IMG/VR virus record: IMGVR_UViG_3300050120_000152
Location: 62,001-126,000 of that record
Strand: one strand, 5' to 3'
Length of the DNA: 64,000 nt
Each line of letters starts with the position of its first letter. Position 1 is the stretch's first letter. The position numbers were made by a program, and so were the translations under genes. The notes beneath the pieces were generated by a model. It saw nothing but the letters and a program-made list of their open reading frames with translations, made no database searches and was not told the origin of the DNA. Positions 5,528 through 28,255 of this stretch are shown piece by piece.

Positions 5528-5639
5528 ATGGAAAACCTGTGTAATGTTATTTATTGATTTGTATACATAGTTACTGCGAACAAAATAATTAAAAGACCCA
5601 TCCACATTCCATAAATAGAAGGTAATTTATGGAATTTAA

Positions 5640-6735: not shown

Positions 6736-6793
6736 ATTGATTGTTGTGTTGAAATACATTATCATAGTGAAATAAATTATAAGGTGGAAGAAT

Positions 6794-7330: not shown

Positions 7331-7341
7331 AGGAATTAATT

Positions 7342-7968: not shown

Positions 7969-7971
7969 AAA

Positions 7972-9361: not shown

Positions 9362-9443
9362 ATATTAATGATATTTATCGTTAATAGTCTTTCCATGAAC
9401 ACAAAAACATGTTATCATCTTGTTCATAAATGGATAGTAACAA

Positions 9444-10013: not shown

Positions 10014-10097
10014 AAATCAATAATATTATTGAAAAACAAATAGCAGAAGTAGTAACAGTAATTGACTGATCTTGAACCTTGAGTTATACTTGGTAAA

Positions 10098-10676: not shown

Positions 10677-10724
10677 CAGGAAAATATTTTCCTGTAGTAC
10701 AATAACTAAAACAGGAAGATAATT

Positions 10725-11012
10725 ATGAAATTCGCAAATAAAACTAAAGTAAAGAGCCTTCTAGAAAAGGGTGGTGTGTTAATTGATCTACGTGATCCAG
10801 TATCTTTCCGTAATGGATCAATTGATGGCGCTAAAAATCTTCCATTGACTAATTTTATTAATAGTTTTTTGAAGTTTGATAAAAACAAGCCTATTGTGCT
10901 TATTGTGAATTTTGTTGATGATGCTGATCTTAAAACCGTCAATACTTATGCAGATCAGTTAGGCTATGAAAAGGTTTGGGCAGCTGAATACAATCAGTTG
11001 CGTGGCGAATAA
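10725..11012 (+). CDS. Rhodanese-like domain protein
   Basis: LIDLRDPVSFRNGSIDGAKNLP; catalytic Cys not evident. Confidence 0.7.
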   Translation: MKFANKTKVKSLLEKGGVLIDLRDPVSFRNGSIDGAKNLPLTNFINSFLKFDKNKPIVLIVNFVDDADLKTVNTYADQLGYEKVWAAEYNQLRGE

Positions 11013-11016
11013 TGGA

Positions 11017-11045
11017 TTGACAATTGCATTATAGTAGCGTATAGT
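11017..11045 (+). promoter_or_regulatory. Sigma70-type early promoter (representative; similar TTGACA sites at about 12925, 18359, 27568, 42473, 44714, 52090, 53187, 54667, 58188)
   Basis: TTGACA-17 bp-TATAGT. Confidence 0.75.
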
Positions 11046-11100
11046 GGCTTCCTAATCGGAAGCCATTTTCACTTCCATCACATCACATTAGGAATATATC

Positions 11101-12288
11101 ATGTTGGGTCTTTTTTTATTTTTAATAATCATGTCTTTTCTGGTTGCTGTAGTATGCCGTTATGGCTTTCCAAATCGGTTTAATAATTTCGAAACCTGTC
11201 TAATCATAGGTGGTTCCCTATTGTGCGGCTTACTTCTTATGGGTATCGTCTCGTGGAATGCTACATCAGATTATGATGTTCTTAATGGACAGGTCACAAG
11301 CAAAGTTATGGAACGTGTAAGCTGTTCCCACAGTTATCAATGCCATTGTCATACAGTGAGTTCAGGTTATGGTAAAAGTCGTTCTTCACATACTGAATGT
11401 GATACTTGTTATGAACATCCGTATGATCAAGATTGGGTTGTAAAATCGACCATTGGAAATTTTGATATCAATCGTGTAGACCGCCAAGGTCTTGATGAAC
11501 CTCATCGCTGGACTATTGTAAATAAGAATGATCCAGTATCGGATACCGAAACTGTAAGAAATTACGTGTTGGCTGCACCAAATAGCTTGTTCAATGTGTC
11601 TAAATTTGCTAACGATAATGCTACTTTCGGTAAATATTTTCCATCGTATCCCAAAGTATATGATTACTACCACTTTGATCATGTCATCAATATGGGTGTG
11701 ACTGGACTTAAGATTAAAGATTATAATGTTGCTATGGCCGATATTATGCGAAACATTGGCCCCGCTAAACAAGCTAATATTGTTGTGGTGTTTGTTCCAA
11801 TTGATAATCGTGCCTACTTACAAGCATTAGAGCGTCATTGGCTTGGTTCCAAAAAGAATGATATTGTGGTAGTTATCGGAATCACTCATTATCCGCAGAT
11901 CGCATGGGCTGGTGCGTTCACATTCGGCAAGAGTGCTAAGAATGAATTGCTTGTAGTGAAAATGCGTGATACCATCGAAAATGTAAATGATGTATCAAAG
12001 GTGGATGATGTTGTAGCTCAGATCAAAGTTAATGCTGAATATTATTATAATCGCCAATCAATGAGTAACTATGAATACCTCAAACACGATTATTTCCCTA
12101 GTTCGAAAGCATTAATTATTTCTGGTGTGTTCTATCTTATCGTCTTACTAGCTTTGTTGGTGTTTTTCTGGCTCAAAGACGTTACCATGAATGGTATTGC
12201 AAATGGTGAAACATCAGGTTATAATGGTAACACAAGCAAATCGTTCTCAAATCTCAATCGTTTCAATAACTCAAGGAAATTCAAATGA
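11101..12288 (+). CDS. Membrane protein with a Cys/His-rich extracytoplasmic region
   Basis: Two N-terminal and one C-terminal TM helices; CSHSYQCHC...CDTCYEH. Confidence 0.7.
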   Translation: MLGLFLFLIIMSFLVAVVCRYGFPNRFNNFETCLIIGGSLLCGLLLMGIVSWNATSDYDVLNGQVTSKVMERVSCSHSYQCHCHTVSSGYGKSRSSHTECDTCYEHPYDQDWVVKSTIGNFDINRVDRQGLDEPHRWTIVNKNDPVSDTETVRNYVLAAPNSLFNVSKFANDNATFGKYFPSYPKVYDYYHFDHVINMGVTGLKIKDYNVAMADIMRNIGPAKQANIVVVFVPIDNRAYLQALERHWLGSKKNDIVVVIGITHYPQIAWAGAFTFGKSAKNELLVVKMRDTIENVNDVSKVDDVVAQIKVNAEYYYNRQSMSNYEYLKHDYFPSSKALIISGVFYLIVLLALLVFFWLKDVTMNGIANGETSGYNGNTSKSFSNLNRFNNSRKFK

Positions 12289-15534: not shown

Positions 15535-16722
15535 ATGAAAATTTTTAAGGTAGGTGGAAGCATTCGTGATTTCTTTCTAAAAAAGACTCCACACGATCAT
15601 GATTATGTAGTCGTGGGTGCAACACCTTCTGAAATGGAATCTATGGGCTATAAACAAGTCGGTAAGGACTTCCCGGTCTACTTGCATCCTGATACTGGCG
15701 AAGAGTACGCGTTGGCTCGTACAGAGCGTAAAACAGGCTTGAAGCATACTGATTTTGATACAGTGTTTGATACTTCGGTAACCATTGAAACTGACCTTGC
15801 CAGACGTGATTTAACGATAAATTCTATTGCGCAAGATTTGGAAACTGGTGAATACATCGATCCATTCAATGGCATTCAAGATATTGAAAATAAAGTGCTG
15901 CGTCATACCACGGAAGCCTTCAAGGAAGACCCATTGCGTGTATTGCGTTTGGGACGTTTCTGTGCAAAATTTCCAGATTTTGAAGTGGCCGATGATACAG
16001 ATACAATGGTAAATCATATGATTGCCCGTGGTGAATTGGAGCATTTGTCCAAGGATCGTGTGTGGGAAGAAACTAAGAAAGCAGTGTTGTCAAAAGAACC
16101 GTTTAAATATTTTCTATTCTTACATCATGTGGAAGCATTACAATATGCTGTCATCGGTGGAAATATGATTACGGCTGAATTTGCTGAAGCGTTTAAGCGG
16201 ATTACCGAGTCTACTGAAAAAATGCCAGATGATGAAAAACTGTTGTGTCGTATGGCAGTCGTTTATTACCATTTGGGTACTTTATATAAATTGCAGTATC
16301 AATCTAACAAAGCTGCTACAGCAGAATTGAATACATGGAAAATTCCAACAGAAATTGCAGAATTTATTCAATTGGTGAATACTAAAGCATATGCGCTGAC
16401 GCATACTATTTTTAATTATAAGAATTTAGTTGAAATTATGGATGATATTGGAGTACGTAATAGAATTCAGAAGAATGACAGTTTCTTACAGAATTTGGGT
16501 TTAGTGTGTAACGCAATTTATCCAACAAAAGATATGTCTGCTACATATGACCCTGAATGGAATATTAAACATTTTATTGAACATGTACCATGCTATTTCG
16601 ATACCAAGGAAGCATTGGCCGAATGGATGGATGTAAATAAGCATGCTACAGGTAAAGAAATCAATGACAGATTGAAATTGATTAGAATACAAAATATGTT
16701 TTTAAATAGAGCTACACTATGA
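15535..16722 (+). CDS. cca: tRNA nucleotidyltransferase (CCA-adding enzyme, class II)
   Basis: VGGSIRD, DHDYVVVGA, VGKDFPV, EYALARTERK, DLARRDLTINSIA, EDPLRVLR. Confidence 0.95.
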   Translation: MKIFKVGGSIRDFFLKKTPHDHDYVVVGATPSEMESMGYKQVGKDFPVYLHPDTGEEYALARTERKTGLKHTDFDTVFDTSVTIETDLARRDLTINSIAQDLETGEYIDPFNGIQDIENKVLRHTTEAFKEDPLRVLRLGRFCAKFPDFEVADDTDTMVNHMIARGELEHLSKDRVWEETKKAVLSKEPFKYFLFLHHVEALQYAVIGGNMITAEFAEAFKRITESTEKMPDDEKLLCRMAVVYYHLGTLYKLQYQSNKAATAELNTWKIPTEIAEFIQLVNTKAYALTHTIFNYKNLVEIMDDIGVRNRIQKNDSFLQNLGLVCNAIYPTKDMSATYDPEWNIKHFIEHVPCYFDTKEALAEWMDVNKHATGKEINDRLKLIRIQNMFLNRATL

Positions 16723-17330
16723 AGAAAGTAAAAGCCGTAGTATTTGATGCATATGGTACCATTGTAAAAATTGGGAAAAAGACTAAACCACTAAATCCAT
16801 ATAAAATGATTTCCGGTAATATTAAAAATCATGGTTACAATCCTGTAACCATGGAGTTATCATTGAAAGATTATGATGAAATAATGCAAGGTAGTTCAGC
16901 CTATATAGATAATTATATTGAAGCTGAGATTGCTCTTCAAAAAGAAATTAAGTCTATCAAACCGTTCCCAGAAGCTATGGATGTAATGAAAATATTAAAG
17001 AAACATGGAATTAAAATTGCAGTTTGTTCTAATTTAGCACAACCATATGCACAGCCGATCATTGACATTTTTGGTGATGTAGTAGATGAATATGTTTGGA
17101 GTTTCAACACATTTGCTAAACCTGATATTCGAATTTATCAAATTGTAGAAGAGCGACTTGGATTACTAGGTAACGATATTCATATGATCGGAGATAGTTA
17201 CATCAATGATTATATGACGCCCAAAGAATTTATGGGTTGGTCGGCAACATTTTTGGATAGAACTGGCGGTGATGCTGGGCATCCATCGGTGTCACGCCTT
17301 AATTCTATTTTTCTGGATATTCAATTATGA
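16719..17330 (+). CDS. HAD-family hydrolase
   Basis: VFDAYGT, CSN, KPD, MIGDS..ND. Confidence 0.85.
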   Translation: MKKVKAVVFDAYGTIVKIGKKTKPLNPYKMISGNIKNHGYNPVTMELSLKDYDEIMQGSSAYIDNYIEAEIALQKEIKSIKPFPEAMDVMKILKKHGIKIAVCSNLAQPYAQPIIDIFGDVVDEYVWSFNTFAKPDIRIYQIVEERLGLLGNDIHMIGDSYINDYMTPKEFMGWSATFLDRTGGDAGHPSVSRLNSIFLDIQL

Positions 17331-18349
17331 CAACTATATTAATCATAACCGACGCATTTTTGCCGCAGGTAAACGGGGTTGTAACTACTTTCATTAATAC
17401 TATAAAAGTATTAGAACAGGAAGGTTTTGTAGTAGATGTTATATCACCATCATTATTTAAAACGATTCCCTTAATTGGTTATAGAGAAATCAGAATTGCC
17501 ATCAATCCATGGATAGTCGGCAAATTGATAGAAACTATAAACCCCGATCATATCCATATTGCTACAGAAGGCCCAATAGGTTTATTTGCTGGAATTTATT
17601 GTCGAAAAAAAGGTTACCAATTTTCTACATCGTATCATACAAAAATGCCAGAGTATATCAAGGAAAGATATAAAGTTATACCAGTAAACTTTAGTTACAC
17701 TTATATGAAATTTATTCATCGCGGATCATCTAATATTTTAGTTACTACTGATTCTATGAAAACCGAACTGCTTAAACAGGGGTTTAAAAATAAAATAACT
17801 GTATGGGGTCGAGGGGTTGATACTACAATTTTTAATGATACAGGTAGAATACCACATAAAAAACTGTCACTACTATATGTAGGACGAATATCTATCGAAA
17901 AAAATATTAAGGCATATCTTGATATGCCTGTAGATGCAGTAAAATATGTAGTAGGTAATGGCCCTCTGTTGGAGACTTATAAGAAAAATTATAAAAATGA
18001 TCCTAATATTATATTTGTTGGTGAAAAGAAGGGCAAAGAATTACAATATTATTATGTAAATGCAGATGTATTTGTATTTCCTTCAAAAACTGACACACTT
18101 GGAATTGTATTGCTAGAATCCATAGCATGCGGTACGCCTGTCATAGCTTATCCAGTTACGGGGCCAATTGACTGTATTACAGATGGTTTGACTGGAATAT
18201 TAAGCAATAATCTTGGTAATATTGAGATGCAGAAAGCAATATTGTTAGATAGACATAAAATATTTGAAATAGGTCAAACTCTTACATGGGAAAAGTGTAC
18301 GGACATTTTCAGAAACTCTTTGGTGAGAGCATTGAACTATCGTAAATAA
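17327..18349 (+). CDS. GT4 glycosyltransferase, Agt-like (diacylglycerol glycosyltransferase)
   Basis: TDAFLPQVNGVV, HIATEGPIG, SYHTKMPEY, WGRGVD, VGRISIEKN, FPSKTDTLGIVLLE. Confidence 0.85.
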   Translation: MTTILIITDAFLPQVNGVVTTFINTIKVLEQEGFVVDVISPSLFKTIPLIGYREIRIAINPWIVGKLIETINPDHIHIATEGPIGLFAGIYCRKKGYQFSTSYHTKMPEYIKERYKVIPVNFSYTYMKFIHRGSSNILVTTDSMKTELLKQGFKNKITVWGRGVDTTIFNDTGRIPHKKLSLLYVGRISIEKNIKAYLDMPVDAVKYVVGNGPLLETYKKNYKNDPNIIFVGEKKGKELQYYYVNADVFVFPSKTDTLGIVLLESIACGTPVIAYPVTGPIDCITDGLTGILSNNLGNIEMQKAILLDRHKIFEIGQTLTWEKCTDIFRNSLVRALNYRK

Positions 18350-18418
18350 TGAGTTGGCTTGACACTTTCCATCAATTGCGTTACAATATCTTTTGAATAA
18401 TAAAAAAGGATTAGTACA

Positions 18419-18838
18419 ATGGAAACGCAAATGGTTACGTCATGTGGAGTGTTGGTCAAGCATGCCGGGAAATATATTCTCGGTCATGCTACAGGTCGAA
18501 TTCATTTTGATATTTTTAAGGGTAGAATGGATGAAGGTGAAACTTATCTTCAGACAGCATTGCGTGAATGTCAAGAAGAATCGGGATTAATCTTTACAGG
18601 TGAAGCTATTCATGATCTAGGTTTACATGATTATATTAAGAATAAAATGCTGTATCTTTATATCGGTAAACTTGAAGAATTGGACATGTCAACGATGGCA
18701 TGCTCAACCTATTTTGATAATAATATTCTTGAAATGGATTATTACGAATCATTTGAATTTGATGAAATGCTTACCAAGATCGGTAAAAACATGCGTCGAA
18801 TTTTTCTTTCATTAAAAGATACTATTGAAGCTTATTGA
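18419..18838 (+). CDS. NUDIX hydrolase
   Basis: KGRMDEGETYLQTALRECQEESG Nudix box. Confidence 0.9.
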   Translation: METQMVTSCGVLVKHAGKYILGHATGRIHFDIFKGRMDEGETYLQTALRECQEESGLIFTGEAIHDLGLHDYIKNKMLYLYIGKLEELDMSTMACSTYFDNNILEMDYYESFEFDEMLTKIGKNMRRIFLSLKDTIEAY

Positions 18839-19389
18839 GAATTATTATGTATACCTATATCCCAAATTTTATTGAAAATCCAGATGCAGTTTTGGATACT
18901 TTAGTCAATGACCTTGCATGGACTAGGCACGGTACTGTGCCGCGTTTGGAATATTATACCAGCAAACTCGGTTTACCATATTCTTACGGCGTAGCAGCCT
19001 ACGCCAGAGAGTATCCTTCACAAGCTTCTCATCCAACTATTGAATTGATCGAAAACAATCTTAATAAAGAAACTGGAGCCTCTTACGAGGTATGTTTCCT
19101 CAATAGATATGAAGATCAATCTGACCATTTAGGATGGCATGCAGATGATAGTCCAGAAATGGATGATACAAGACCAATCTGTATTGTAAGTTTAGGTGTT
19201 GAGCGTGAAATTTGGTTCAAACCACAAGGTGGTTCAGCAGATGATGTGTTCAAGTTGAAGCTTGGGCATGGTTCATTGTGTATTATGCCAGCCGGAATGC
19301 AAGATACACATTATCATAGAATTCCAAAGGCCAGCTTTTTGTGTGGTCGAAGAATTTCTTTAACTTATAGGGGCTATGTTGCACCATGA
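18835..19389 (+). CDS. AlkB-family 2OG-Fe(II) dioxygenase
   Basis: LNRY, GWHADD, VSLG, HRIPK, RISLTYR. Confidence 0.9.
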   Translation: MRIIMYTYIPNFIENPDAVLDTLVNDLAWTRHGTVPRLEYYTSKLGLPYSYGVAAYAREYPSQASHPTIELIENNLNKETGASYEVCFLNRYEDQSDHLGWHADDSPEMDDTRPICIVSLGVEREIWFKPQGGSADDVFKLKLGHGSLCIMPAGMQDTHYHRIPKASFLCGRRISLTYRGYVAP

Positions 19390-19656
19390 GAGAAATTACA
19401 CAAGAAGAGATAGATGCGGTTGTTGACGGAGCATTATTAATGATCGCTTCTCTTGGGCCATCAATATTTAATTTTTCAAACGTAAAGGTTACAGGAGAAA
19501 ATTTAGAAAATATGTGCTGTCTACTAAGAGTATTATCAACATGGAGAGTAGATATAACTGGTTATGAAATATGTATTTCACGATGTAAAACATGTTGTTT
19601 AGAAGATGGAATCGACCCTCAAGATATTTTATACGGTATGATACCGAAGGAATAAT

Positions 19657-20085
19657 ATGGAAAATAATTTTTTGGGAACTTATAACTGTCCCATTTGTAC
19701 AAAATCTTCACCACATTCACATGATTTAATTAATCATTGGATTGGTGTGGATTTTGATAATACTCTTGCCTACGATAGTCCAACTAGACATGATCCATAT
19801 TCTTTGGGTGAACCCATAATAGAGATGGTAAATCGTGTGAAGGACTGGATAGCTAGGGGTTATACGGTAAAGATATTCACCGCTAGAATGTGTGATTTTT
19901 CTTATACCAGTAATCAATCGCGTGATGTAGACAACATGCGTTCTGTGCTTGAAGCATGGTGTTTAAAGCATATTGGTAAAGTAGTAGAATGTACTAATCA
20001 AAAAGATGGTGCTATGGAAGTATTATGGGATGATCGTGCTGTCAGGGTAGCATACAATATGGGTAAACCTGAACATACATCTTAA
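19657..20085 (+). CDS. HAD-like phosphatase
   Basis: GVDFDNTLA, IFTAR, LWDDRAV. Confidence 0.75.
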   Translation: MENNFLGTYNCPICTKSSPHSHDLINHWIGVDFDNTLAYDSPTRHDPYSLGEPIIEMVNRVKDWIARGYTVKIFTARMCDFSYTSNQSRDVDNMRSVLEAWCLKHIGKVVECTNQKDGAMEVLWDDRAVRVAYNMGKPEHTS

Positions 20086-20090
20086 TAACA

Positions 20091-20126
20091 AAATGAAACG
20101 GGGAGCAATTGCTCCCCGTTTCATTT
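20091..20126. terminator. Bidirectional intrinsic terminator between convergent genes
   Basis: aaatgaaacggggagc-aatt-gctccccgtttcattt. Confidence 0.85.
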
Positions 20127-20127
20127 A

Positions 20128-20892
20128 TTAAATACCAGCCTCTTCGCATGCACAAATAAAAGATTTTACGAACCCACTACGTACAATATCATTTCTAGTG
20201 AATGATATGATATCTAATTCATCCATCAGATTAGCTACCTGCATAAATTTATCAAATCCACTGGGAGTTTTTTTATCATATAGAAGATCATTTTGACGAC
20301 GGTCACCAATCACAAAGATTTTACTATTTTTACCCACTCGTGTCATAACAGAAGTTATTTCCTCAATATTCATATTTTGTACTTCATCTACAATGATGAT
20401 AGCATTATCCCAAGTTAAACCTCTGATGAAGGTGGTTGGCATGAACTCAATTTTTCTAACAGCTTTCATGTCATCATATGAAGAAGCCTTGCCTAATAAA
20501 TCATGTAGAATATCTTTATAAGGTGCTTCAAACGGTGCCATCTTATCCTCTAACTCACCCGGCAATGCTCCCACATCTTTACCAGTACCCACATTCGATC
20601 TAACGATTATAATTTTATTTTGATTGTATTCTTTAGAAAGGATAGCATTTAAGGCAAGCCATAATGCAATATAGGTTTTTCCTGTTCCAGCTGAACCATC
20701 AGCAACAATATGGTTACCCATATAAAATGATTCTATCATAGTTGCTTGAGGATCATTTAGCGGTTTGATGTTCTTAATGTCTAAAACCGTCCACGATTTC
20801 TTTCTTGCGCCTTGTGTAATGGCAAAAACATTACTTTCGGTGAACTCTGGATTTTCAACTCTGGGTTTTCTGTGTGAAGCTTTTCTAGCCAT
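20128..20892 (-). CDS. phoH: PhoH-family ATPase
   Basis: GSAGTGKT, GALPGE, FIRGLTWDNAIIIVDEVQN, GDRRQND, DIVRS. Confidence 0.93.
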   Translation of the reverse strand: MARKASHRKPRVENPEFTESNVFAITQGARKKSWTVLDIKNIKPLNDPQATMIESFYMGNHIVADGSAGTGKTYIALWLALNAILSKEYNQNKIIIVRSNVGTGKDVGALPGELEDKMAPFEAPYKDILHDLLGKASSYDDMKAVRKIEFMPTTFIRGLTWDNAIIIVDEVQNMNIEEITSVMTRVGKNSKIFVIGDRRQNDLLYDKKTPSGFDKFMQVANLMDELDIISFTRNDIVRSGFVKSFICACEEAGI

Positions 20893-21327
20893 ATAATTTT
20901 CTCCTAAAATTTATAATTGCTATATTAAAAATTGGGTTAGGTATCACATTAAATTATCTTACATAGGCAGACTCCTTCATTGACATTAACCGAGGCTGAA
21001 TGTATAATTTCGTGATTAAAATTACATGTTGGAAAAGAAAATTTTGACAAACTTGAGAATCCTTTCGATTTCAATAATATTTATGAATAACATAGAGTAA
21101 AACTAAAAATGACAAACAAAACCTATATTTACGAAGGTAAAGAACATGTTCTAACTGGCCGTACTGCAACAAAACGATTACGCTCAGATAAGATAAAAAT
21201 ATTACATGAAATTCGGCCTGCCGATTTGGATTCTGATAAAAATGAATTTAACCAATGGATAGAAATGGATGATCTATTCGTAGTCGAAGATTTACCAGAA
21301 TAAATATAAACAGATAACTATTAGGAA

Positions 21328-21843
21328 ATGAATGTGAAATTGGAAACCTTAAGTGAAGCATTAAAAGAAAGCCCAACACGCGGTACATATGTTGCTGTAA
21401 ATTTTTCAAAAGATACTGCCAAGCGAATAAAAGCTTTTATTAAAAAGTATAATATTCCTAACCCATTAGCAACCAACAAATTACATACGACTATCATTTA
21501 TTCAAGAAAATATTTACCCGAGTTTAAGACTCAGGGTAAATTGGATGAGCCGTGGGTAGGTAAGCCATCAAAATTAGAAATTTTTAAAAGTAGAGAAGGT
21601 AATAACTGCTTAGTGGTATTATTTACCTGTAAGGAAGCTGTTGCTCGCCATAAAGAAATAATGAAAGACCATGAAGCTACCTACGGTTTTCCAGAATTTA
21701 AAACACATTTTACATTGTCCTACGATTCTGGGGATTTCGACCCAGACTCTATCAAAAATCTTAAAGATGAACTTGGTGATATTGAAATTGTTGAAGAATA
21801 TACAGAAGATTTGAACTTGGATTGGGCTAAAAAATCCAGTTAA
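21328..21843 (+). CDS. acb1: Anti-CBASS 2H phosphodiesterase (Acb1 / T4 57B-like)
   Basis: GTYVAVNFS, PNP...LHTTIIYSR, HFTLSY and EYTEDLNLDWA follow the T4 57B layout with two HxT motifs. Confidence 0.85.
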   Translation: MNVKLETLSEALKESPTRGTYVAVNFSKDTAKRIKAFIKKYNIPNPLATNKLHTTIIYSRKYLPEFKTQGKLDEPWVGKPSKLEIFKSREGNNCLVVLFTCKEAVARHKEIMKDHEATYGFPEFKTHFTLSYDSGDFDPDSIKNLKDELGDIEIVEEYTEDLNLDWAKKSS

Positions 21844-21909
21844 AGTAGGTTTGTGCGACACACTTTTTTTAGTACCATAAATAATTTTACAAATTATATG
21901 GAATAAAAA

Positions 21910-23094
21910 ATGTTTAAAACCAATGAATTAGAAATTATAAATGTAATTTACAATATTAAAAATAATGAGTCATCATACAAAAACAAAATAGCCCAGATTC
22001 AAAAAGTTATTTCTGACTATATCAATTCAAACCGATTAATCGTTAAAGTAGATTTTTTGGATAGGTACATAGAAGTTACTTATGGAATAACTTTAAAGCG
22101 TAGACAATCTACATTAGATTATCAAAATAATCCAGAATATAGAAAACTTGTATTAGAATCATCCTTCGATTCGGTGGCAGGCTTAGACGAAAACGATTGT
22201 TTTAATAAATTAGAAAACGATCAGTTTCCCCTTTATATCTGTATTGAAACTATGTTTACTTATACTATCGATTCCTTTAGTGATCAGAAAAATGGTCACA
22301 TTTTAGATCAAATATTAAACAATAATAGATATGAAACACGATTTGGTTTTGAGTTATTTGATAACGATAACTATAAACCTATAATTAGAAAGATTAACAT
22401 CAACGATTATTTAACATCGGATGATTTAATTAAACTTGATAATATAATTTCTGTTGTGGGCGTAGCCACTAAAGTATGTAATGATCTAATAGATAATCAT
22501 CTAATAGAACCTAAAAAATATGATGAAGATACAACTGCTAAAAAATATGATGAAGATACAACTGCTAAAAAATATGATGAAGATACAACGGCTATATTAG
22601 GCGAGGAACTTTACGATAGTACCTATGATACCAAAAAAGTTGTTCATACGGTGAATGAAATCAAATATTATGTCAGACAAGTTACCGGGTACGGTAATGA
22701 AGATATATTCATGAATTCATTAGATTTGAAGACCTATGAAGATGTTGATAAATTACAATGTATCAAGCAATTTTTGAGATTGGTGCATCTGATCATGTCA
22801 AAAATGGAATATAATTATGATTATTTGGGCAATATTAAAGACTTGCCGATTGGTGAGTTACATGCTGATGGACATTTCTGCCAAAATAGTAGATTGATAA
22901 AGATCATTGGCCGAGTGATAAAATCTACTATCATCTCCACGCGCGATCTAGAATATATTATCACATTGTATTCTGACAAATCATATGTTGTAGGGTTGGC
23001 TATTAAGCATACTGATGAAGTTAAGAAAGAACCTGAGATGATGACACTCAACAGAAGTGAAAACACTTTGAAAGAATATAGTCAGTTCGCCTAA
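21910..23094 (+). CDS. Hypothetical protein with an internal 9-aa tandem repeat
   Basis: Long ORF; KKYDEDTTA x3. Confidence 0.7.
   Translation: MFKTNELEIINVIYNIKNNESSYKNKIAQIQKVISDYINSNRLIVKVDFLDRYIEVTYGITLKRRQSTLDYQNNPEYRKLVLESSFDSVAGLDENDCFNKLENDQFPLYICIETMFTYTIDSFSDQKNGHILDQILNNNRYETRFGFELFDNDNYKPIIRKININDYLTSDDLIKLDNIISVVGVATKVCNDLIDNHLIEPKKYDEDTTAKKYDEDTTAKKYDEDTTAILGEELYDSTYDTKKVVHTVNEIKYYVRQVTGYGNEDIFMNSLDLKTYEDVDKLQCIKQFLRLVHLIMSKMEYNYDYLGNIKDLPIGELHADGHFCQNSRLIKIIGRVIKSTIISTRDLEYIITLYSDKSYVVGLAIKHTDEVKKEPEMMTLNRSENTLKEYSQFA
22511..22593 (+). repeat. 27-bp tandem repeat x3
   Basis: ctaaaaaatatgatgaagatacaactg repeated head to tail. Confidence 0.95.
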
Positions 23095-23125
23095 CCTATT
23101 GCATTACATTTAGATTCCGTGTAGA

Positions 23126-25027
23126 ATGACCATTCATTTCTACACGGAATTTTTTATGTCTGACATTGATGCCATCGTTGCCCAACTTGAAGTGTACGAT
23201 ATCGCCTATGATGATGGTGATTCACTCGTACCTGATGCACAATACGATGCTATGAAACGTGATGCATTCAAGCGATTCCCAACTCACCCATATTTTATGA
23301 CCGTAGGCGCTACCGTTCGTGGTGGTAAGGTTAAGCTTCCTTATACCATGGGGTCACTTGACCAAAAATACGAGGGTGAAATCGAAGATTGGGTTAAAAA
23401 GTATAGTCTGTATAATGAAGAAATTTGTATTAGTCATAAACTTGATGGTGCAAGTGGCATGGAACGTTATAATGGTGGAACATTTCAGATATCTTATAGT
23501 CGTGGTAATGGTGTGCTTGGTGCAGATAGTAGCCGCCATGTAAAGAATTTGCCAAGTAATCCCCAAACAATTTCTAAATTAGGTCATCTAACTGTTCGCG
23601 GTGAATTAATTGTTCGCAATGATACGTTCGAAAATCGTTATGCGGATGATTATAAGACCGCTCGTGCTATGGCATCTGGTTGCATGAATGCATCTAATAC
23701 GTCACAGAATAAATTGAACGATATTGATTTTATTATGTATAGTGTTGTTGACTGTGATCCAGAATTCGAAACGGTTTCACAATCAGCCTCTTTGGATATG
23801 CTTGAATTATTAGGATTTAAAGTTGTTCCTTATATTATTGTTAGGGGATCGGAATTGAATGATGATTTCCTTACTAAAACGTTGGCTAAAGCACGCGCAG
23901 ATTCGCCATATGAATTAGATGGTATCGTGTTGACTATCAACAAAAAGTCTGCACAAAAGAATTTATCGAATTCTTCCAGTTTGAATCCTGAACATTCTGT
24001 AAAATATAAAGTTTTGGATGCTGCTGCATTGATTGAAACGACAGTAGTTAAAGTCCATTATGAAATTAGTAAGAATGGATATCAGAAGCCTCGCGTGGAG
24101 ATTAACCCTGTTCAGCTATTCGGCACAACGGTAACGTTCGCCACGGGCTTTAATGGCCGTTACATTGTGGATAATAACATTGGATCGGGAACCAAAATCA
24201 AAATTACCAAAAGTGGATCAGTTATTCCATATATTGTAGAAATTGTTAAATCTACCGTCGCCGATGTTCCGTCTGGCGATTGGGATTGGAATGATAACAA
24301 GGTAGAAATGGTAGTTCGTGATCCACAGAATCATCCTGAAGTCATTTTTAAACAAGTATTGGACTTCTTTAATACACTGGAAGTTGATCTACTAAAGGAA
24401 GCATCTATCGAAAAGGTTATTAGCTATCTGAAGCTTAATAATTCTTCCTATGAAACCATTCTGTTCACTATGCTTAATTTGCTAGAAATGGAATGGGAGA
24501 AGATCATTGGCTCTAATGGTGCAAAAATCTTTGCCAGCTTGGAACGTCGATTGTCGTCCTTGACTCTTGCTAAATATTTGGGATCACTTAAATATTTTGG
24601 TACGGGGTTTGGAGTTCGCAAGGCTAAACTATTGTTGAAAAATCTTACGGATGAAAATGATGTATGGAAATTATCTGTCAATAGGATTGTGGATTTTGAA
24701 GGTTTCGATGTAAAGACTGCAACAAAGTTTATTGATGGCTTATATGATGCTAAGGCATTTGCTGACAAAATGAATTTGAAGTTTGTGCAGGAAAAGAAAA
24801 CTAATGAATTAGAACATTTGAATGTTGTATTCACTGGTTTTCGTGATAAAGAATTTCAAGAAAAACTTGAGAAATCAGGTGCCAAAGTTGGATCATCAGT
24901 GTCTAAAAAGACAACTCATGTGCTAACAGCAGAACCAAATTCTAGTTCAGGTAAGGCTGTCAAGGCTCGTGAGTTAGGTATTGATACTCTTTCGCTAGAT
25001 GAATTTAAAGAAAAATTTAATTTATGA
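23126..25027 (+). CDS. ligA: NAD+-dependent DNA ligase (likely start 23156)
   Basis: DAQYD, KLDG, SRGNG, RGE, DGIV, KSGSVIP, C-terminal BRCT (VFTG...SVSKKT). Confidence 0.93.
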   Translation: MTIHFYTEFFMSDIDAIVAQLEVYDIAYDDGDSLVPDAQYDAMKRDAFKRFPTHPYFMTVGATVRGGKVKLPYTMGSLDQKYEGEIEDWVKKYSLYNEEICISHKLDGASGMERYNGGTFQISYSRGNGVLGADSSRHVKNLPSNPQTISKLGHLTVRGELIVRNDTFENRYADDYKTARAMASGCMNASNTSQNKLNDIDFIMYSVVDCDPEFETVSQSASLDMLELLGFKVVPYIIVRGSELNDDFLTKTLAKARADSPYELDGIVLTINKKSAQKNLSNSSSLNPEHSVKYKVLDAAALIETTVVKVHYEISKNGYQKPRVEINPVQLFGTTVTFATGFNGRYIVDNNIGSGTKIKITKSGSVIPYIVEIVKSTVADVPSGDWDWNDNKVEMVVRDPQNHPEVIFKQVLDFFNTLEVDLLKEASIEKVISYLKLNNSSYETILFTMLNLLEMEWEKIIGSNGAKIFASLERRLSSLTLAKYLGSLKYFGTGFGVRKAKLLLKNLTDENDVWKLSVNRIVDFEGFDVKTATKFIDGLYDAKAFADKMNLKFVQEKKTNELEHLNVVFTGFRDKEFQEKLEKSGAKVGSSVSKKTTHVLTAEPNSSSGKAVKARELGIDTLSLDEFKEKFNL

Positions 25028-25476
25028 TATATCCGACACTATCAAAATCTAAAATGCCAATTATTGAAAATCCAAAATATGCATGGATGTATGGATTAAA
25101 GCCGGAAGGGTTTTGGTATAGTAAAGAAGAGCCACATTATCCTCAAGCTGAACATAGTGATGTGGAGCATTCATTAAAGCAGCAAATTTTAAATGCTTAT
25201 GATAATTTATTGAACGAAGATAGATTTAACCCGCATCGCAATGAATCATGGGATACTAATGAACATGTTATAACATATAGAGGATCATCTTGGTGCCGAT
25301 GCTGTACAAAAGAACAACAGTTTAATCAAGAGACTAGAAAAATTCTTATATCCATGGGTTCTCGGCAATACGTATTAAATGGCTGGGAATGGCCCGAAGG
25401 ATATCGACATTATATTGATGTACATAATATTGTTCCATCTAAAGAGTGGCTTGAAAATGTGCTAAATATATATTAA
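25024..25476 (+). CDS. Hypothetical protein
   Basis: YRGSSWCRCC...WPEGYRHYIDVHNIVP motif; coupled to ligA. Confidence 0.65.
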   Translation: MIYPTLSKSKMPIIENPKYAWMYGLKPEGFWYSKEEPHYPQAEHSDVEHSLKQQILNAYDNLLNEDRFNPHRNESWDTNEHVITYRGSSWCRCCTKEQQFNQETRKILISMGSRQYVLNGWEWPEGYRHYIDVHNIVPSKEWLENVLNIY

Positions 25477-25480
25477 AGAG

Positions 25481-26245
25481 ATGGAAATGAACTATAACGC
25501 TATATTCATCAGTGATGTACATTTAGGAAGAATTGAAAGCCAGCATATAAAATTATTAGCTTTTCTCAAATCTCTTGAGACTGACGATGGGCATGGTTAT
25601 AGAGTGAAAACATTATATCTCAATGGTGATATTGTTGATGTTACAAATTTTCAAAAGAAACCATTCTTTTCTGATCATTTAACAGTCATAAAGAAAATAC
25701 TTAGAATGAAAGACAAGGGTGTCAGAGTCGTGTATATCCTTGGAAATCATGAAGCGCCTTTGAAATCTTATATTTTTGAAAACGATGATATTGAATATAA
25801 TGGTATTGAATTCAAAAAACATGCGATTCATGATGCAATCAATGGCAAAAAATATTTGATTATTCACGGTGATCAATTTGATGGCATTGTAAGAACACAT
25901 CCAGTAATTTACAAACTTGGTGATTTTGCTTATAATTTAATGAATAGCCTTAATCGAATTCAAAATAGAATTCGTAGATTATTTGGTAAAGTGGAATGGT
26001 CTTTTGCTCATTGGATAAAAATGAAAGCTAAAGGTGCTGTAAAATTTGTTGCTAATTTTGAGCATATTATCGTCGATTATTCTAAGAAATATAATGTCGA
26101 TGGAGTAATGGCAGGTCATATTCATATGCCAGAAAATAGAATGATTGATGGAGTTCATTATTTAAATAGCGGATGTTGGGTAGAATTGTGTTCTGCCATA
26201 TTAGAAGATGAACATGGAAATATATCGGTACAACGATTTGATTAA
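25481..26245 (+). CDS. Calcineurin-like metallophosphoesterase, PlcP/LpxH-like
   Basis: SDVHLG, GDIVD, GNHE, HGDQFD, GHIH, NSGCWVE; WSFAHWIKMKAKGAV insert typical of PlcP. Confidence 0.85.
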   Translation: MEMNYNAIFISDVHLGRIESQHIKLLAFLKSLETDDGHGYRVKTLYLNGDIVDVTNFQKKPFFSDHLTVIKKILRMKDKGVRVVYILGNHEAPLKSYIFENDDIEYNGIEFKKHAIHDAINGKKYLIIHGDQFDGIVRTHPVIYKLGDFAYNLMNSLNRIQNRIRRLFGKVEWSFAHWIKMKAKGAVKFVANFEHIIVDYSKKYNVDGVMAGHIHMPENRMIDGVHYLNSGCWVELCSAILEDEHGNISVQRFD

Positions 26246-26254: not shown

Positions 26255-26446
26255 ATGAACCAATTTAATGCCTATTTAGGCCAACCTTTTGAAGTATTGG
26301 AAGCAGCTTGTCATAAGGCTGGAAAAACTATTAGAATTACCGTACTCAATGGTCAAGCACAAAGAGTAACCCAAGAAATTAATGTGAATCGTTTGAACGT
26401 CAGTGTAGACCATAACATTGTAGTTCATGTGGGGAATTTCGGATGA
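26255..26446 (+). CDS. Peptidase inhibitor I78-like small protein
   Basis: VTQEINVNRLNVSVD...G pattern. Confidence 0.55.
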   Translation: MNQFNAYLGQPFEVLEAACHKAGKTIRITVLNGQAQRVTQEINVNRLNVSVDHNIVVHVGNFG

Positions 26447-26883
26447 TACATTATTGCGTAGGATTCGCATTCTATTATGATAATAATAGTGTAGCTCTTA
26501 TAAAAAAGAATAGACCGGCATGGCAAGCTGGTAAAATGAATGGTATTGGCGGTAAACTTGAATTAGATGAAACACCTGTAGAAGCCATGATTCGTGAGTT
26601 TAGAGAAGAAACCGGCCATGAAATTACTGATTGGAAAGATTTATGTACATTGCACGGTAATGATTTTGTAGTTAGCGTATTTGTATCATATGACAATGAT
26701 CATCCTGAATTATTAAAGACCATGACAGATGAAATGATAGATATTGTTGATATTTATGTAGTTAATGATAATTGTTGTGAATCATGGTTTATTAGCAATC
26801 TACCATGGTTAGTCAATTTAGCTCTCGATCCTGATTTCAAAATGGGTAGAATTGATCCGCCCATTATTAATTATAATAAATAA
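26443..26883 (+). CDS. NUDIX hydrolase
   Basis: GIGGKLELDETPVEAMIREFREETG. Confidence 0.9.
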   Translation: MIHYCVGFAFYYDNNSVALIKKNRPAWQAGKMNGIGGKLELDETPVEAMIREFREETGHEITDWKDLCTLHGNDFVVSVFVSYDNDHPELLKTMTDEMIDIVDIYVVNDNCCESWFISNLPWLVNLALDPDFKMGRIDPPIINYNK

Positions 26884-27757: not shown

Positions 27758-28150
27758 TCCAAAGTAATTTGGATTATGATTGTAAAGATATCGTAAGGTA
27801 TCTGAGATTGTGAGTAATAAAGGGCCGCGACACGAGGGTTCGACTCCCTCCATCTCCACCACATATGTTCTTTACTGTTGCAACAGTAACGCTAGACGCC
27901 TATCAACTCCCTTCGAAAGGAGCCATGTGTAGGATGAGACAAGCCCAATGATGGCGCGGAAGAACATAGCTGATGGGGATGCAATGGCTTCGACCGGGGT
28001 TAGAATAGACAAACAGACAATCCGTTTAGAATGGTACGTTATACCTTAAAAAACTATAAATGCTTCTAACGATGCGATTTATTCAATGGAATACAGCTTA
28101 GCTGCTTGAAATTGATGGGGTTTAATCCACCTTATTACCCAACAAGATTA
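27758..28150 (+). ncRNA. ssrA: Circularly permuted (two-piece) tmRNA; outer ends approximate
   Basis: Acceptor piece ends GAGGGTTCGACTCCCTC-CATCTCC-ACCA (27861); coding piece starts GGGGATG (27975) giving G3:U70; tag ORF 28062-28109 encodes ASNDAIYSMEYSLAA*. Confidence 0.92.
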
Positions 28151-28151
28151 C

Positions 28152-28175
28152 AAAAAGGAGCTTCGGCTCCTTTTT
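28152..28175 (+). terminator. Intrinsic terminator of the tmRNA
   Basis: aaaaaggagc-ttcg-gctccttttt. Confidence 0.9.
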
Positions 28176-28255
28176 GTTTTATAGTGCATTGCAAAATATT
28201 CAAATGATTTTCATCCACCATAAATACTTAGACATTTATTTTGGAGGATACTAAA

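What the first reader, a model, noticed from the sequence alone, without database searches (positions are those of the whole stretch)
17327..26245. Phage carries the PlcP/Agt phosphate-sparing lipid-remodelling pair together with PhoH
Seen: a GT4 enzyme (TDA..PQVNGVV, HIATEGP, YHT..PEY) and a metallophosphoesterase (HGDQFD, LGDFAY, WSFAHWIK.KAK.AV, GHIH, NSG.WVE). Known: in many Proteobacteria plcP and agt act together under P limitation, with PlcP cleaving phospholipids to diacylglycerol and Agt converting it to glycolipids. Inference: the phage mines host membrane phosphate for nucleotide synthesis while keeping the membrane intact. phoH lies between the two genes.
Basis: partly seen in the sequence, partly recalled or inferred. 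Interest (0 to 1): 0.7.

Follow-up and report, generated by a model that had tools for sequence, protein, structure and literature searches.

The report
Phage-borne PlcP–Agt membrane lipid-remodelling genes
A complete 340-kb jumbo phage from peat carries intact, conserved copies of the two bacterial enzymes (PlcP phospholipase C and Agt glycosyltransferase) that swap phosphorus-containing membrane lipids for sugar lipids, which suggests that viruses can free membrane phosphorus during infection, a kind of viral helper gene I found in none of the papers I searched.

Summary
All quoted motifs and coordinates are correct: GT4 at 17327-18349, metallophosphoesterase at 25481-26245, phoH at 20128-20892 (minus strand). 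The esterase nests inside the PlcP clade, far from true LpxH: 27 bits on the LpxH model (cut-off 134), GNH rather than LpxH's GNR, and a PlcP-type lipid-binding cap. The GT4 belongs to the discrete Agt/GTcp family. It is 44-46% identical to SAR11 GTcp orthologs and keeps the His-Asp dyad, both UDP-sugar motifs and the Arg/Trp diacylglycerol contacts. In 57 of 80 cellular loci the two homologs form a plcP-agt operon. In three related phage contigs they are adjacent or one small ORF apart, so the 7-kb split here is a recent relocation of the GT4, and phoH lying "between" them is incidental. Both genes are under purifying selection. PlcP-like genes occur in at least 554 IMG/VR contigs, in Pelagibacter phage Mosig (next to pstS) and in a cyanophage, annotated as LpxH where annotated. 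Phosphorus mining is plausible (peat source, no phage pstS) but remains inferred: no Pho box, no expression data, host unknown. I found no prior report of phage plcP/agt. These are new members of known families in a new, viral context.

The parts
25481..26245 (+). plcP-like gene: an intracellular metallophosphoesterase of the PlcP (phospholipase C, 'LpxH2') clade, 254 aa. It has a catalytic core plus a helical lipid-binding cap at about residues 141-204.
   Evidence: Pfam Metallophos. It scores 27 bits on the LpxH equivalog model, cut-off 134. It scores 175-192 bits against PlcP-like paralogs and 26 bits or less against true LpxH of the same genomes. The tree places it inside the PlcP clade. 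It has GNH rather than GNR, and a PlcP-type cap signature. All 10 metal/catalytic residues are invariant in 31 phage-clade proteins, and dN/dS is below 0.15. The AF2 model has pLDDT 80, and its best structural matches are LpxH-fold proteins. The DxH motif at residues 12-14 leaves no room for a signal peptide (sequence).
17327..18349 (+). agt-like gene: a GT4 glycosyltransferase of the Agt/GTcp diacylglycerol glycosyltransferase family, 340 aa.
   Evidence: Pfam GT4 domains. It is 44-46% identical to Pelagibacteraceae GTcp orthologs and 38-41% to the single Agrobacterium homolog (246 bits against 36 bits or less for other GT4s). The tree places it in the Agt/GTcp family. It keeps GTcp functional residues G16, G82, G85, H104, R163, R190, K195, D256, T257, G259, E264 and W320. 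T162 is Gly and F258 is Leu. dN/dS is below 0.16.
20128..20892 (-). phoH (PhoH-like ATPase). This is a neighbour and not demonstrably part of the module. It is a monocistronic unit on the opposite strand.
   Evidence: Pfam PhoH 172.8 bits, PHROG 170. A terminator lies at its 3' side and a promoter region at its 5' side. In relatives it lies upstream of an adjacent plcP-agt pair. No cellular plcP locus has phoH within 6 kb.
20980..21008 (+). A perfect sigma-70 consensus promoter (TTGACA-17-TATAAT) at the head of the plus-strand gene run 21109...26245. That run ends with ligase, a DUF7919-like ORF and plcP.
   Evidence: 12 of 12 matches. This is a consensus match only, so its function is inferred.
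20091..20126 (.). A strong hairpin terminator (16-bp stem) between the GT4-containing plus-strand unit and phoH. It separates the transcription units of the GT4 and the esterase.
25024..25476 (+). A 150-aa ORF (weak DUF7919 match) packed between the ligase and plcP. It overlaps the ligase stop by 4 nt and ends 5 nt before plcP, so it is probably co-transcribed. Its function is unknown.
   Evidence: A homolog lies directly upstream of plcP in L095. It is absent from cellular plcP loci.
16719..17330 (+). HAD-IA family hydrolase whose stop overlaps the GT4 start by 4 nt. It is a phage backbone gene, and the GT4 was inserted next to it.
   Evidence: In L185 and L093 the same HAD is followed by NUDIX with no GT4.

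Best explanation
The phage carries a functional two-enzyme lipid-remodelling module that an ancestor of its lineage captured from a bacterial plcP-agt operon. During infection the cytoplasmic PlcP-type metallophospholipase C would cut the phospho-headgroup off host glycerophospholipids and leave diacylglycerol in the membrane. The Agt-type GT4 would then transfer glucose or glucuronic acid from host UDP-sugars onto that diacylglycerol, producing phosphorus-free glycolipids (MGDG/GADG). The membrane stays intact while the lipid phosphorus becomes available for synthesis of the 340-kb phage genome, an advantage in phosphorus-poor peat. Shown here: family membership, intact catalytic residues, purifying selection, operon ancestry, and recurrence in other phages. 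Inferred: enzyme activities, substrates, timing, and that the benefit is phosphorus supply. phoH is a bystander.
For: PlcP identity. The window protein scores 27 bits on the LpxH model (cut-off 134). Five genomes each hold a true LpxH (278-320 bits) and a separate PlcP-like paralog (34-53 bits). Against those same genomes the window protein scores 175-192 bits on the paralogs and 26 bits or less on the true LpxH. A branch of length 3.62 with 100% support separates LpxH from the PlcP clade that contains the window protein. It has GNH where LpxH has GNR, and its cap is 37% identical to PlcP caps against 11% for LpxH. Cellular PlcP controls score like the phage protein on the LpxH models. Agt identity: with diagnostic residues taken from the GTcp paper. 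Operon ancestry. The arrangement plcP then agt is found in 57 of 80 cellular loci. The genes are adjacent in L094 and L095 and one 68-aa ORF apart in the closest relative, L185. Synteny is collinear except for the transposed GT4. Both gene trees have matching phage clades. Maintenance: dN/dS is below about 0.15, and the catalytic residues are invariant in 31 and 20 phage-clade proteins. Phosphorus context. The source is a peat metagenome. The Mosig homolog is divergent from a pstS-type gene, and pstS is adjacent in IMG/VR loci L124 and L164. The complete phage genome has no pstS of its own. The known pathway comes from PMC4796936 and PMC9804370. Order of magnitude: one genome holds 680,688 P atoms, and a textbook E. 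coli-size lipid pool of about 2e7 molecules equals about 29 genomes (the lipid number is from general knowledge).
Against: There is no biochemical or expression evidence, and no RNA run was listed. Pho-box-like sites are not enriched and none lies upstream of either gene (5 found against 6.9 expected), although the host and its regulators are unknown. The two genes are now in separate transcription units 7.1 kb apart. GTcp Thr162, reported as important for activity, is Gly in 15 of 20 phage-clade proteins, and Phe258 is Leu in this phage. The phage encodes no recognised phosphatase for the released phospho-headgroup and no UDP-glucose dehydrogenase. A close relative (L093) and many other phages carry plcP without agt within about 10 kb, so the pair is not obligatory. 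The trees are quick searches with SH-aLRT support only.
Confidence: 0.55

Rival explanations
1. The chemistry is the same (phospholipid to diacylglycerol to glycolipid), but the selected benefit is a changed membrane rather than phosphorus. Possible benefits are blocking superinfection by altering receptor display or membrane properties, stabilising the envelope through a long jumbo-phage infection, or protecting the infected cell against cationic antimicrobials or grazers.
For: Host lipid remodelling changes phage attachment and membrane protein content (PMC9938194; PMC9804370). PlcP/Agt glycolipids protect P. aeruginosa against polymyxin (PMC8528852). No Pho box was found. The esterase sits in a unit headed by a sigma-70 consensus promoter together with the anti-defence gene Acb1.
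Against: The neighbours of homologs in other phages are phosphate genes (pstS in Mosig, L124 and L164). The source is peat. Neither protein matches any defence-system model. Remodelling in bacteria is tied specifically to P stress.
Confidence: 0.2
2. The two genes no longer act as a pair. PlcP alone supplies diacylglycerol or headgroups, or helps dismantle the membrane late in infection. The relocated GT4 glycosylates another acceptor such as a lipid carrier, LPS or a phage component.
For: The genes are 7.1 kb apart in different transcription units. Many phages, including L093, Mosig and S-SRM01, carry plcP without agt nearby. The GT4 has Gly at the Thr162 acceptor-site position and Leu at Phe258.
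Against: The strictly conserved diacylglycerol contacts Arg163 and Trp320 and the His-Asp dyad are intact. The GT4 remains a typical member of the Agt/GTcp clade under purifying selection. The pair is adjacent or nearly so in the nearest long relative and in deeper relatives.
Confidence: 0.1
3. The esterase is an LpxH (UDP-2,3-diacylglucosamine hydrolase), as database annotations say, and together with the GT4 it alters lipid A or LPS.
For: JGI and GenBank annotate relatives as LpxH. The fold matches LpxH structures.
Against: It scores 27 bits against a 134-bit cut-off. True LpxH coexists as a separate gene in genomes that also hold the PlcP-like paralog. It has GNH where LpxH has GNR, and cap-domain identity to LpxH is 11%. 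A very long branch separates it from LpxH. Its nearest cellular relatives are mostly Alphaproteobacteria, which use LpxI according to PMC5016852 and general knowledge. That paper also notes that the paralog LpxH2 lacks the lipid-X-binding residues.
Confidence: 0.03
4. The esterase is a nucleic-acid phosphoesterase (Mre11/SbcD-like, PdeM-like or PolD small-subunit-like) that works with the adjacent NAD-dependent DNA ligase.
For: It lies two genes downstream of the ligase. There are weak sub-threshold hits to the PolD small subunit, Mre11 and ligase-associated PdeM.
Against: Those hits cover only the generic metallophosphoesterase core and are far below their cut-offs. Bona fide cellular PlcP orthologs give the same weak hits. 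The protein has the LpxH/PlcP-type helical cap. Ligase adjacency is absent in L095 and in cellular loci.
Confidence: 0.02

Closest known systems
PlcP, the intracellular metallophospholipase C of the Pho regulon (S. meliloti SMc00171; Phaeobacter MED193_17359; SAR11 HTCC7211 PB7211_983; P. aeruginosa PA3219)
   Same: It belongs to the same clade, which includes the Agrobacterium and Pelagibacteraceae orthologs. It shares the same catalytic motifs including GNH and the same cap-domain signature. It has the same partner gene downstream in relatives.
   Different: It is encoded by a virus. It is only 37-44% identical to its cellular and IMG/VR homologs. In the A1 alignment the five phage-type proteins carry an extra 7-8-residue insertion after the first helix that the nine cellular-type proteins lack. 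No Pho box was detected. In this phage it is unlinked from agt.
Agt / GTcp, the bifunctional glucosyl/glucuronosyl-diacylglycerol synthase (A. tumefaciens Atu2297; Pelagibacter HTCC7211 WP_008545403.1)
   Same: It has the same discrete GT4 subfamily, length and His104-Asp256 dyad, with Asp replacing the usual GT4 Glu. It has the same GRxxxEKN and FPSxTDTxG motifs and the same Arg163/Trp320 acceptor contacts.
   Different: Thr162 is Gly in most phage-clade proteins and Phe258 is Leu here. Its sugar-donor range is unknown. It was relocated next to a HAD hydrolase gene.
LpxH, the UDP-2,3-diacylglucosamine hydrolase of lipid A synthesis
   Same: The overall fold is the same: a metallophosphoesterase core plus a helical insertion that holds acyl chains.
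   Different: It is a paralogous family. It has GNH and not GNR, its cap residues are unrelated, and it scores far below the family cut-off.
Known phage phosphorus and lipid auxiliary genes (pstS, phoA, phoH; cyanophage lipid desaturases)
   Same: The logic is the same: a host-derived gene carried by large myoviruses in nutrient-poor habitats. In Mosig and two IMG/VR contigs the plcP-like gene sits beside pstS.
   Different: It targets an internal phosphorus store (membrane lipids) rather than uptake, and it consists of two sequential enzymes. It is absent from the soil phage P-gene survey and the virocell paper that I read.
'UDP-2,3-diacylglucosamine hydrolase' genes of Pelagibacter phage Mosig EXVC030M (Mosig_00120) and Synechococcus phage S-SRM01
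   Same: They are homologs at 36% and 31% identity. Mosig's protein falls in the PlcP clade near the Pelagibacteraceae and carries most of the PlcP cap signature.
   Different: Neither phage has an agt homolog. S-SRM01 sits on a long branch at the base of the PlcP clade, so its placement is unsure.

Membership tests
PlcP (metallophospholipase C, 'LpxH2' clade) | Complete metallophosphoesterase metal-binding and catalytic motifs (DxH, GD, GNH, H, GHxH) | tested here: met
   D12, H14, D50, N89, H90, H129, H213 and H215 are present. They are invariant in 31 phage-clade proteins and 17 cellular PlcP-like proteins.
PlcP (metallophospholipase C, 'LpxH2' clade) | Phylogenetic placement with plcP orthologs of organisms where PlcP was characterised (Agrobacterium/Rhizobiaceae, SAR11), apart from LpxH | tested here: met
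   it nests in the PlcP clade, and the LpxH split has 100% support on a branch of length 3.62; it scores like the paralog and not like LpxH in genomes that hold both.
PlcP (metallophospholipase C, 'LpxH2' clade) | PlcP-type helical cap (insertion-domain) signature | tested here: met
   G147, N158, N162, G169, W173, S174, K184, A186 and F193 are shared with PlcP-like proteins. Cap identity is 37% to PlcP-like against 11% to LpxH.
PlcP (metallophospholipase C, 'LpxH2' clade) | Genomic linkage to a diacylglycerol-consuming lipid synthase gene (agt directly downstream, the type 2 neighbourhood) | tested here: met
   Met in relatives L094, L095 and L185 and in 57 of 80 cellular loci. In the window itself the pair is split by 7.1 kb through relocation of the GT4.
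PlcP (metallophospholipase C, 'LpxH2' clade) | Pho-box / PhoB-dependent induction under phosphate limitation | tested here: inconclusive
   There is no enrichment of an E. coli-type Pho box and none upstream of the genes. The host and its Pho box are unknown, and phage genes may follow the phage's own programme.
PlcP (metallophospholipase C, 'LpxH2' clade) | Phospholipase C activity on PE, PG or PC that yields diacylglycerol | not testable with these tools
   This needs an enzyme assay or complementation of a plcP mutant.
Agt / GTcp (GT4 diacylglycerol glycosyltransferase) | GT-B GT4 domains with the catalytic dyad His104-Asp256 (Asp in place of the usual GT4 Glu) | tested here: met
   Pfam. 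H104 and D256 are present and invariant in 20 phage-clade proteins.
Agt / GTcp (GT4 diacylglycerol glycosyltransferase) | UDP-sugar motifs GRVAXEKN and FPSXTDTFG with Gly16, Gly82, Gly85, Arg190, Lys195, Thr257, Gly259 and Glu264 | tested here: met
   The window has GRISIEKN and FPSKTDTLG. All listed residues are present, and only Phe258 is Leu.
Agt / GTcp (GT4 diacylglycerol glycosyltransferase) | Strictly conserved diacylglycerol-pocket residues Arg163 and Trp320 | tested here: met
   R162 and W321 of the window protein align with them. In the phage clade Arg is 18 of 20 (Lys in 2) and Trp is 20 of 20.
Agt / GTcp (GT4 diacylglycerol glycosyltransferase) | Thr162, an acceptor-pocket residue reported as important but not strictly conserved | tested here: not met
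   It is Gly161 in the window and Gly in 15 of 20 phage-clade proteins. A cellular operon-linked member has Ser. The source paper does not list this residue among the strictly conserved ones.
Agt / GTcp (GT4 diacylglycerol glycosyltransferase) | Membership of the discrete clade (40% identity or more within it, under about 30% to other GT4s) | tested here: met
   Identity is 44-46% to Pelagibacteraceae GTcp orthologs and 38-41% to the single Agrobacterium homolog (240-246 bits against 36 bits or less for the next GT4). Tree.
Agt / GTcp (GT4 diacylglycerol glycosyltransferase) | Synthesis of MGDG or GADG from diacylglycerol and UDP-Glc or UDP-GlcA | not testable with these tools
   This needs expression and lipid mass spectrometry.
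LpxH (UDP-2,3-diacylglucosamine hydrolase) | Score above the curated equivalog cut-off (NF003743, 134 bits) | tested here: not met
   It scores 27 bits. True LpxH score 278-320 bits.
LpxH (UDP-2,3-diacylglucosamine hydrolase) | [quoted passage not shown] | tested here: not met
   The window has H90 where all five true LpxH have Arg, and the cap is 11% identical. The profile alignment to LpxH structures covers mainly the N-terminal catalytic half and skips the cap.
PhoH-like ATPase (neighbouring gene) | PhoH domain above the Pfam cut-off | tested here: met
   PF02562 scores 172.8 bits against 27, and PHROG 170 matches. It falls below the NCBIfam equivalog cut-off (131 against 380). Its function is unknown, and no functional link to plcP/agt was shown.

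The most novel reading that the evidence does not exclude
Virus-driven membrane lipid remodelling may be a widespread, unrecognised class of phosphorus auxiliary function. Phages from peat, the ocean (pelagimyophage Mosig) and fresh water (a cyanophage) carry plcP, often with agt. Infected cells would then convert their own phospholipids into glycolipids to fuel viral DNA synthesis. Phages could even confer remodelling on hosts that lack it. Part of the glycolipid signal read as bacterial phosphorus stress in nature would then come from infected cells.
Probability: 0.4. Interest if true: 0.8.

Novelty: new member of a known kind. Interest (0 to 1): 0.62.

Why it matters
Phosphorus often limits phage production, and the recognised phage answers are uptake genes (pstS, phoA) and the enigmatic phoH. 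Membrane phospholipids are a large internal phosphorus store, and bacteria are known to tap it through PlcP and Agt. A phage copy of that pathway would be a new route of viral resource extraction that spares the membrane the phage still needs. It would also correct a systematic misannotation, since these genes are labelled LpxH in phage and metagenome records. There is a cultured system to test it: Pelagibacter phage Mosig on HTCC1062. It bears on how lipid biomarkers of phosphorus stress are interpreted in oceans and peatlands.

Tried and rejected
- Megablast of the region against cultured phages found no match.
- A Pho-box search found 5 matches against 6.9 expected, none relevant.
- A search for RNA sequencing runs listed none, so expression could not be examined.
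- An exact-cluster look-up meant to tie the Pelagibacteraceae proteins to the HTCC7211 accession did not show WP_008545403.1 among the members read. The link rests instead on identical length and 15 of 15 matching residue positions in L040.
- I tested whether the HAD hydrolase overlapping the GT4 start, or the DUF7919-like ORF upstream of plcP, belongs to the module, for example as a headgroup phosphatase. Neither occurs in cellular plcP loci. The HAD is a backbone gene present with or without the GT4. I rejected it as an ancestral part, and a role remains speculative.
- A defence or counter-defence role was suggested by a sub-threshold 'GT4-conflict' Pfam hit and the Acb1 neighbour. PADLOC gave no hit.
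- Searches of the phage genome for pstS and for UDP-glucose dehydrogenase found neither.
- The LpxH and nuclease readings were rejected (see the rival explanations).
- The donor lineage of the phage genes could not be resolved. The sister relation to Pelagibacteraceae, Verrucomicrobiota and Lentisphaerota has weak support.
- The host could not be identified.

Full report
OBSERVATION. The GT4 is at 17327-18349 (+), 340 aa. The metallophosphoesterase is at 25481-26245 (+), 254 aa. phoH is at 20128-20892 (-), 254 aa. Pfam confirms the superfamilies: Glycos_transf_1 at 81.5 bits and Glyco_transf_4 at 61.6 bits, Metallophos at 47.3 bits, and PhoH at 172.8 bits. NCBIfam gives only sub-threshold hits for the first two, including LpxH at 27 bits against a cut-off of 134.

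The window is bases 62001-126000 of a complete 340,344-bp virus record with direct terminal repeats. It was assembled from a peat metagenome. The virus is a T4-superfamily jumbo myovirus. It has a gp61-type primase 43% identical to those of Xanthomonas phages Xoo-sp13 and XacN1, plus rIIA/rIIB, NAMPT, RNA ligase, NAD-dependent ligase and a CCA-adding enzyme. Nothing similar at the DNA level exists among cultured phages.

IS THE ESTERASE PlcP OR LpxH? A search of 5.8 billion proteins found a tight group of relatives at 46-82% identity, several on phage-size contigs of 150-350 kb. Beyond those lie cellular proteins at about 38-45% identity, routinely annotated "LpxH".

The 80 best loci from species-representative genomes are mostly Alphaproteobacteria: Pelagibacteraceae, Agrobacterium, Rhizobium, Mesorhizobium, Caulobacter and Sphingomonas. 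A few are Beta- and Gammaproteobacteria or Verrucomicrobiota. Gram-negative bacteria without LpxH use LpxI (PMC5016852). That Alphaproteobacteria are among the LpxI users is my own knowledge.

In five Beta- and Gammaproteobacterial genomes the LpxH model finds two genes each. One is a true LpxH at 278-320 bits. The other is the paralog that resembles the phage protein, at 34-53 bits. The phage protein scores 175-192 bits against those paralogs, and 26 bits or less, or nothing, against the true LpxH of the same genomes.

An 84-sequence maximum-likelihood tree separates true LpxH from everything else by a branch of 3.62 substitutions per site with 100% support. The window protein nests inside the PlcP-like clade, in a 31-member group of metagenomic, phage-type sequences (95% support). 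That group lies near the Pelagibacteraceae and Pelagibacter phage Mosig.

Two discrete characters agree with the tree. The phage protein and 17 of 17 cellular PlcP-like proteins have the canonical GNH motif, where 5 of 5 true LpxH have GNR. The helical cap (residues 132-205) is 37% identical to PlcP-like caps and 11% identical to LpxH caps. It shares the signature G147, N158, N162, G169, W173, S174, K184, A186 and F193.

The LpxH structure paper had already noted that the paralog "LpxH2" has a similar-sized insertion with entirely different conserved residues, and so probably a different substrate. An AlphaFold model (pLDDT 80) shows the core plus a three-helix cap at residues 141-204. Its best structural matches are LpxH, with E about 2e-11 and TM 0.53-0.58. 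No PlcP structure is solved. As a control, bona fide cellular orthologs (Pelagibacteraceae, Agrobacterium) score 43-52 bits on the same LpxH model, just as the phage proteins do.

IS THE GT4 AN Agt? In 57 of the 80 cellular loci a full-length homolog of the phage GT4 (36-48% identity, 155-296 bits) starts about 50-450 nt downstream of the esterase homolog on the same strand. That is the plcP-agt "type 2" neighbourhood described for SAR11 HTCC7211 and others (PMC4796936).

The biochemical study of the HTCC7211 enzyme GTcp (bioRxiv 10.1101/2021.03.25.437072) supplies the diagnostic features. They are a length of 334 aa, a His104-Asp256 dyad with Asp replacing the usual GT4 Glu, the motifs GRVAXEKN and FPSXTDTFG, a set of donor-site residues, and the strictly conserved acceptor contacts Arg163 and Trp320. 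The Pelagibacteraceae operon gene in L040 is 334 aa and has the reported residue at all 15 positions, so the numbering transfers.

The phage GT4 has 12 of the 14 functional residues. The exceptions are Thr162, which is Gly, and Phe258, which is Leu. Across 20 phage-clade proteins the dyad and donor-site residues are invariant or nearly so. Position 162 varies (15 Gly), and position 258 is Phe, Tyr or Leu.

Agrobacterium, whose Agt is biochemically characterised and unlinked to plcP, has exactly one strong match to the phage GT4 (41% identity, 240-246 bits). The next-best GT4 scores 36 bits or less. The phage GT4 is 44-46% identical to the Pelagibacteraceae proteins. Those are 41-46% identical to the Agrobacterium protein. 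A 76-sequence tree puts the phage GT4 inside this family, with other GT4s on very long branches.

THE PAIR IN PHAGES. Three long contigs related to this phage carry both genes together.
- L094 (293 kb): esterase at 10001-10777 and GT4 at 10764-11777.
- L095 (187 kb): esterase at 10001-10768 and GT4 at 10778-11830.
- L185 (200 kb; the closest, with an 82% identical esterase): esterase, then a 68-aa ORF, then the GT4.

The window and L185 are collinear except that the GT4 has moved. Window 17485-18216 matches L185 11145-11875. The HAD-to-NUDIX junction where the GT4 now sits is empty in L185 and L093. So the 7.1-kb separation, and phoH lying "between", are consequences of a recent relocation. 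In the relatives phoH lies 2-6 kb upstream on the opposite strand.

One relative (L093; esterase 77% identical) has no GT4 within 10 kb. No GT4 hit comes from a contig as long as the 350-kb contig that carries its esterase.

Both genes are under purifying selection. dN is 0.14-0.46 with synonymous sites saturated, so dN/dS is below about 0.15. All ten metal/catalytic residues are invariant in 31 phage-clade esterases. None of the other window neighbours has a homolog in the cellular loci, so the captured unit was the two genes only.

BEYOND THIS LINEAGE. IMG/VR holds at least 554 viral contigs with a relative of the esterase. Of the 80 kept, 28 also carry the GT4, and 22 of those have it within 600 nt downstream. 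Six have phoH within 10 kb, and in three the order is phoH, a small gap or ORF, plcP, agt on one strand. Two have a pstS next door. I checked the neighbours of three of these contigs. They match phage-specific families strongly: exonucleases, ribonucleotide reductase and phage-only PHROGs. The others were not checked.

Among cultured phages, Pelagibacter phage Mosig has a homolog (36% identity, annotated as UDP-2,3-diacylglucosamine hydrolase) placed divergently from a phosphate ABC transporter gene. Synechococcus phage S-SRM01 has one inside an island of auxiliary genes. Neither has the GT4.

HOW IT PROBABLY WORKS. The established pathway is as follows. PlcP removes the phospho-headgroup from glycerophospholipids. 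Agt then glycosylates the remaining diacylglycerol with UDP-glucose or UDP-glucuronate. Phosphorus is released and the bilayer is preserved.

The phage enzymes lack signal peptides, since their catalytic motifs start at residues 12 and 16. This is consistent with action at the inner face of the cytoplasmic membrane. The phage has no UDP-glucose dehydrogenase and no pstS, so it would depend on host UDP-sugars and on internal phosphorus.

The esterase lies at the end of a plus-strand gene run headed by a perfect sigma-70 consensus promoter (20980-21008). That run also contains the anti-CBASS gene Acb1 and the DNA ligase. A strong terminator (20091-20126) separates the GT4's unit from phoH. Early expression is therefore an inference from consensus matches.

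One phage genome contains 680,688 phosphorus atoms. A textbook E. coli-size pool of about 2e7 phospholipids would equal about 29 genomes (the lipid figure is general knowledge and the host is unknown).

Several points count against the phosphorus reading. No Pho box was found. There are no expression data. No identified phosphatase handles the released headgroup. The acceptor-site substitutions could alter the GT4's specificity. A membrane-property benefit, such as superinfection exclusion or envelope stability, is a serious rival because host remodelling is known to affect phage attachment.

COMPARISON AND NOVELTY. By every sequence-level defining feature I could test, the two proteins are members of the PlcP and Agt/GTcp families. 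They are not LpxH or generic GT4s. I looked for prior reports of phage-encoded plcP or agt and found none. The sources were six full-text searches, the PlcP-and-phage review, the Mosig genome announcement, a dedicated survey of phage phosphorus genes in soils, and a 2025 virocell study. That study states that little is known about how lipid remodelling plays out in infected cells. The library lacks most subscription journals, so an earlier report cannot be excluded.

I rate this a new member of a known kind: known enzymes and a known operon in a viral setting that appears unrecognised and widespread.

LIMITS. The trees are quick searches with SH-aLRT support only. The characterised reference sequences themselves were not available, so I used orthologs from the same species or family as proxies. 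Only three IMG/VR contigs were checked for viral neighbours. The host is unknown. There is no functional or expression evidence.

Noticed in passing
window 27806-28109 (+) (ARAGORN 27769-28200): The phage encodes a permuted (two-piece type) tmRNA. Rfam tmRNA_permuted scores 88.9 bits against a gathering score of 47. ARAGORN gives the tag peptide ASNDAIYSMEYSLAA. From my own knowledge, permuted tmRNAs are typical of Alphaproteobacteria and a few other lineages, so this may be a clue to the host.
   Followed up: partly
window 21328-21843 (+): An anti-CBASS phosphodiesterase Acb1 (Pfam PF23474, 125.6 bits) lies in the same plus-strand gene run as the ligase and plcP. It is conserved in relatives L093, L094 and L185.
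   Followed up: partly
window 57832-57978 (+): Rfam matches the full tRNA model over 147 nt (54.7 bits), directly after tRNA-Met at 57731-57817. ARAGORN did not report it. It may be a tRNA with a long insertion or an intron. Other tRNAs lie at 49592-49906 and 55396-55492.
   Followed up: no
window 21910-23094 (+): A 394-aa ORF of unknown function contains three tandem copies of the peptide KKYDEDTTA. It has weak homologs (24-26% identity) at the same position in L185 and L093.
   Followed up: no
L093 (relative; esterase 77% identical), 1-11300: This close relative has plcP but no agt within 10 kb, either at the ancestral site downstream of plcP or at the HAD/NUDIX junction. A NUMOD3 homing-endonuclease-like gene sits directly upstream of its plcP. 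This suggests gene loss and a role for mobile endonucleases in reshuffling the region.
   Followed up: partly
window 25481-26245, residues about 36-44 of the protein: In the A1 alignment the five phage-type esterases carry an extra segment of 7-8 residues (DDGHGYRV in the window) that is absent from the nine cellular-type PlcP-like proteins. It is modelled with high confidence, and its role is unknown.
   Followed up: no
L091 (Pelagibacter phage Mosig) 4909-6744: Mosig's plcP-like gene and a pstS-type phosphate-binding protein gene are divergently arranged around a 150-bp intergenic region. That region is an obvious place to look for a shared phosphate-responsive promoter. A 2OG-Fe(II) oxygenase lies two genes downstream, and one also lies two genes downstream of the GT4 in the window (18835-19389).
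   Followed up: no
window 169-1593, 15535-16722, 18419-18838, 26443-26883: The region is rich in nucleotide and cofactor genes: NAMPT, a CCA-adding enzyme and two NUDIX hydrolases, plus rIIA/rIIB at 42499-45765 and an RNA ligase at 60091-61077. This is typical of the auxiliary and early regions of T4-like jumbo phages.
   Followed up: partly
L117 (IMGVR_UViG_3300032236_002285): A 476-kb IMG/VR contig also carries a plcP-like gene (39% identity) with no agt within 10 kb. I did not check whether it is a huge phage or cellular contamination.
   Followed up: no
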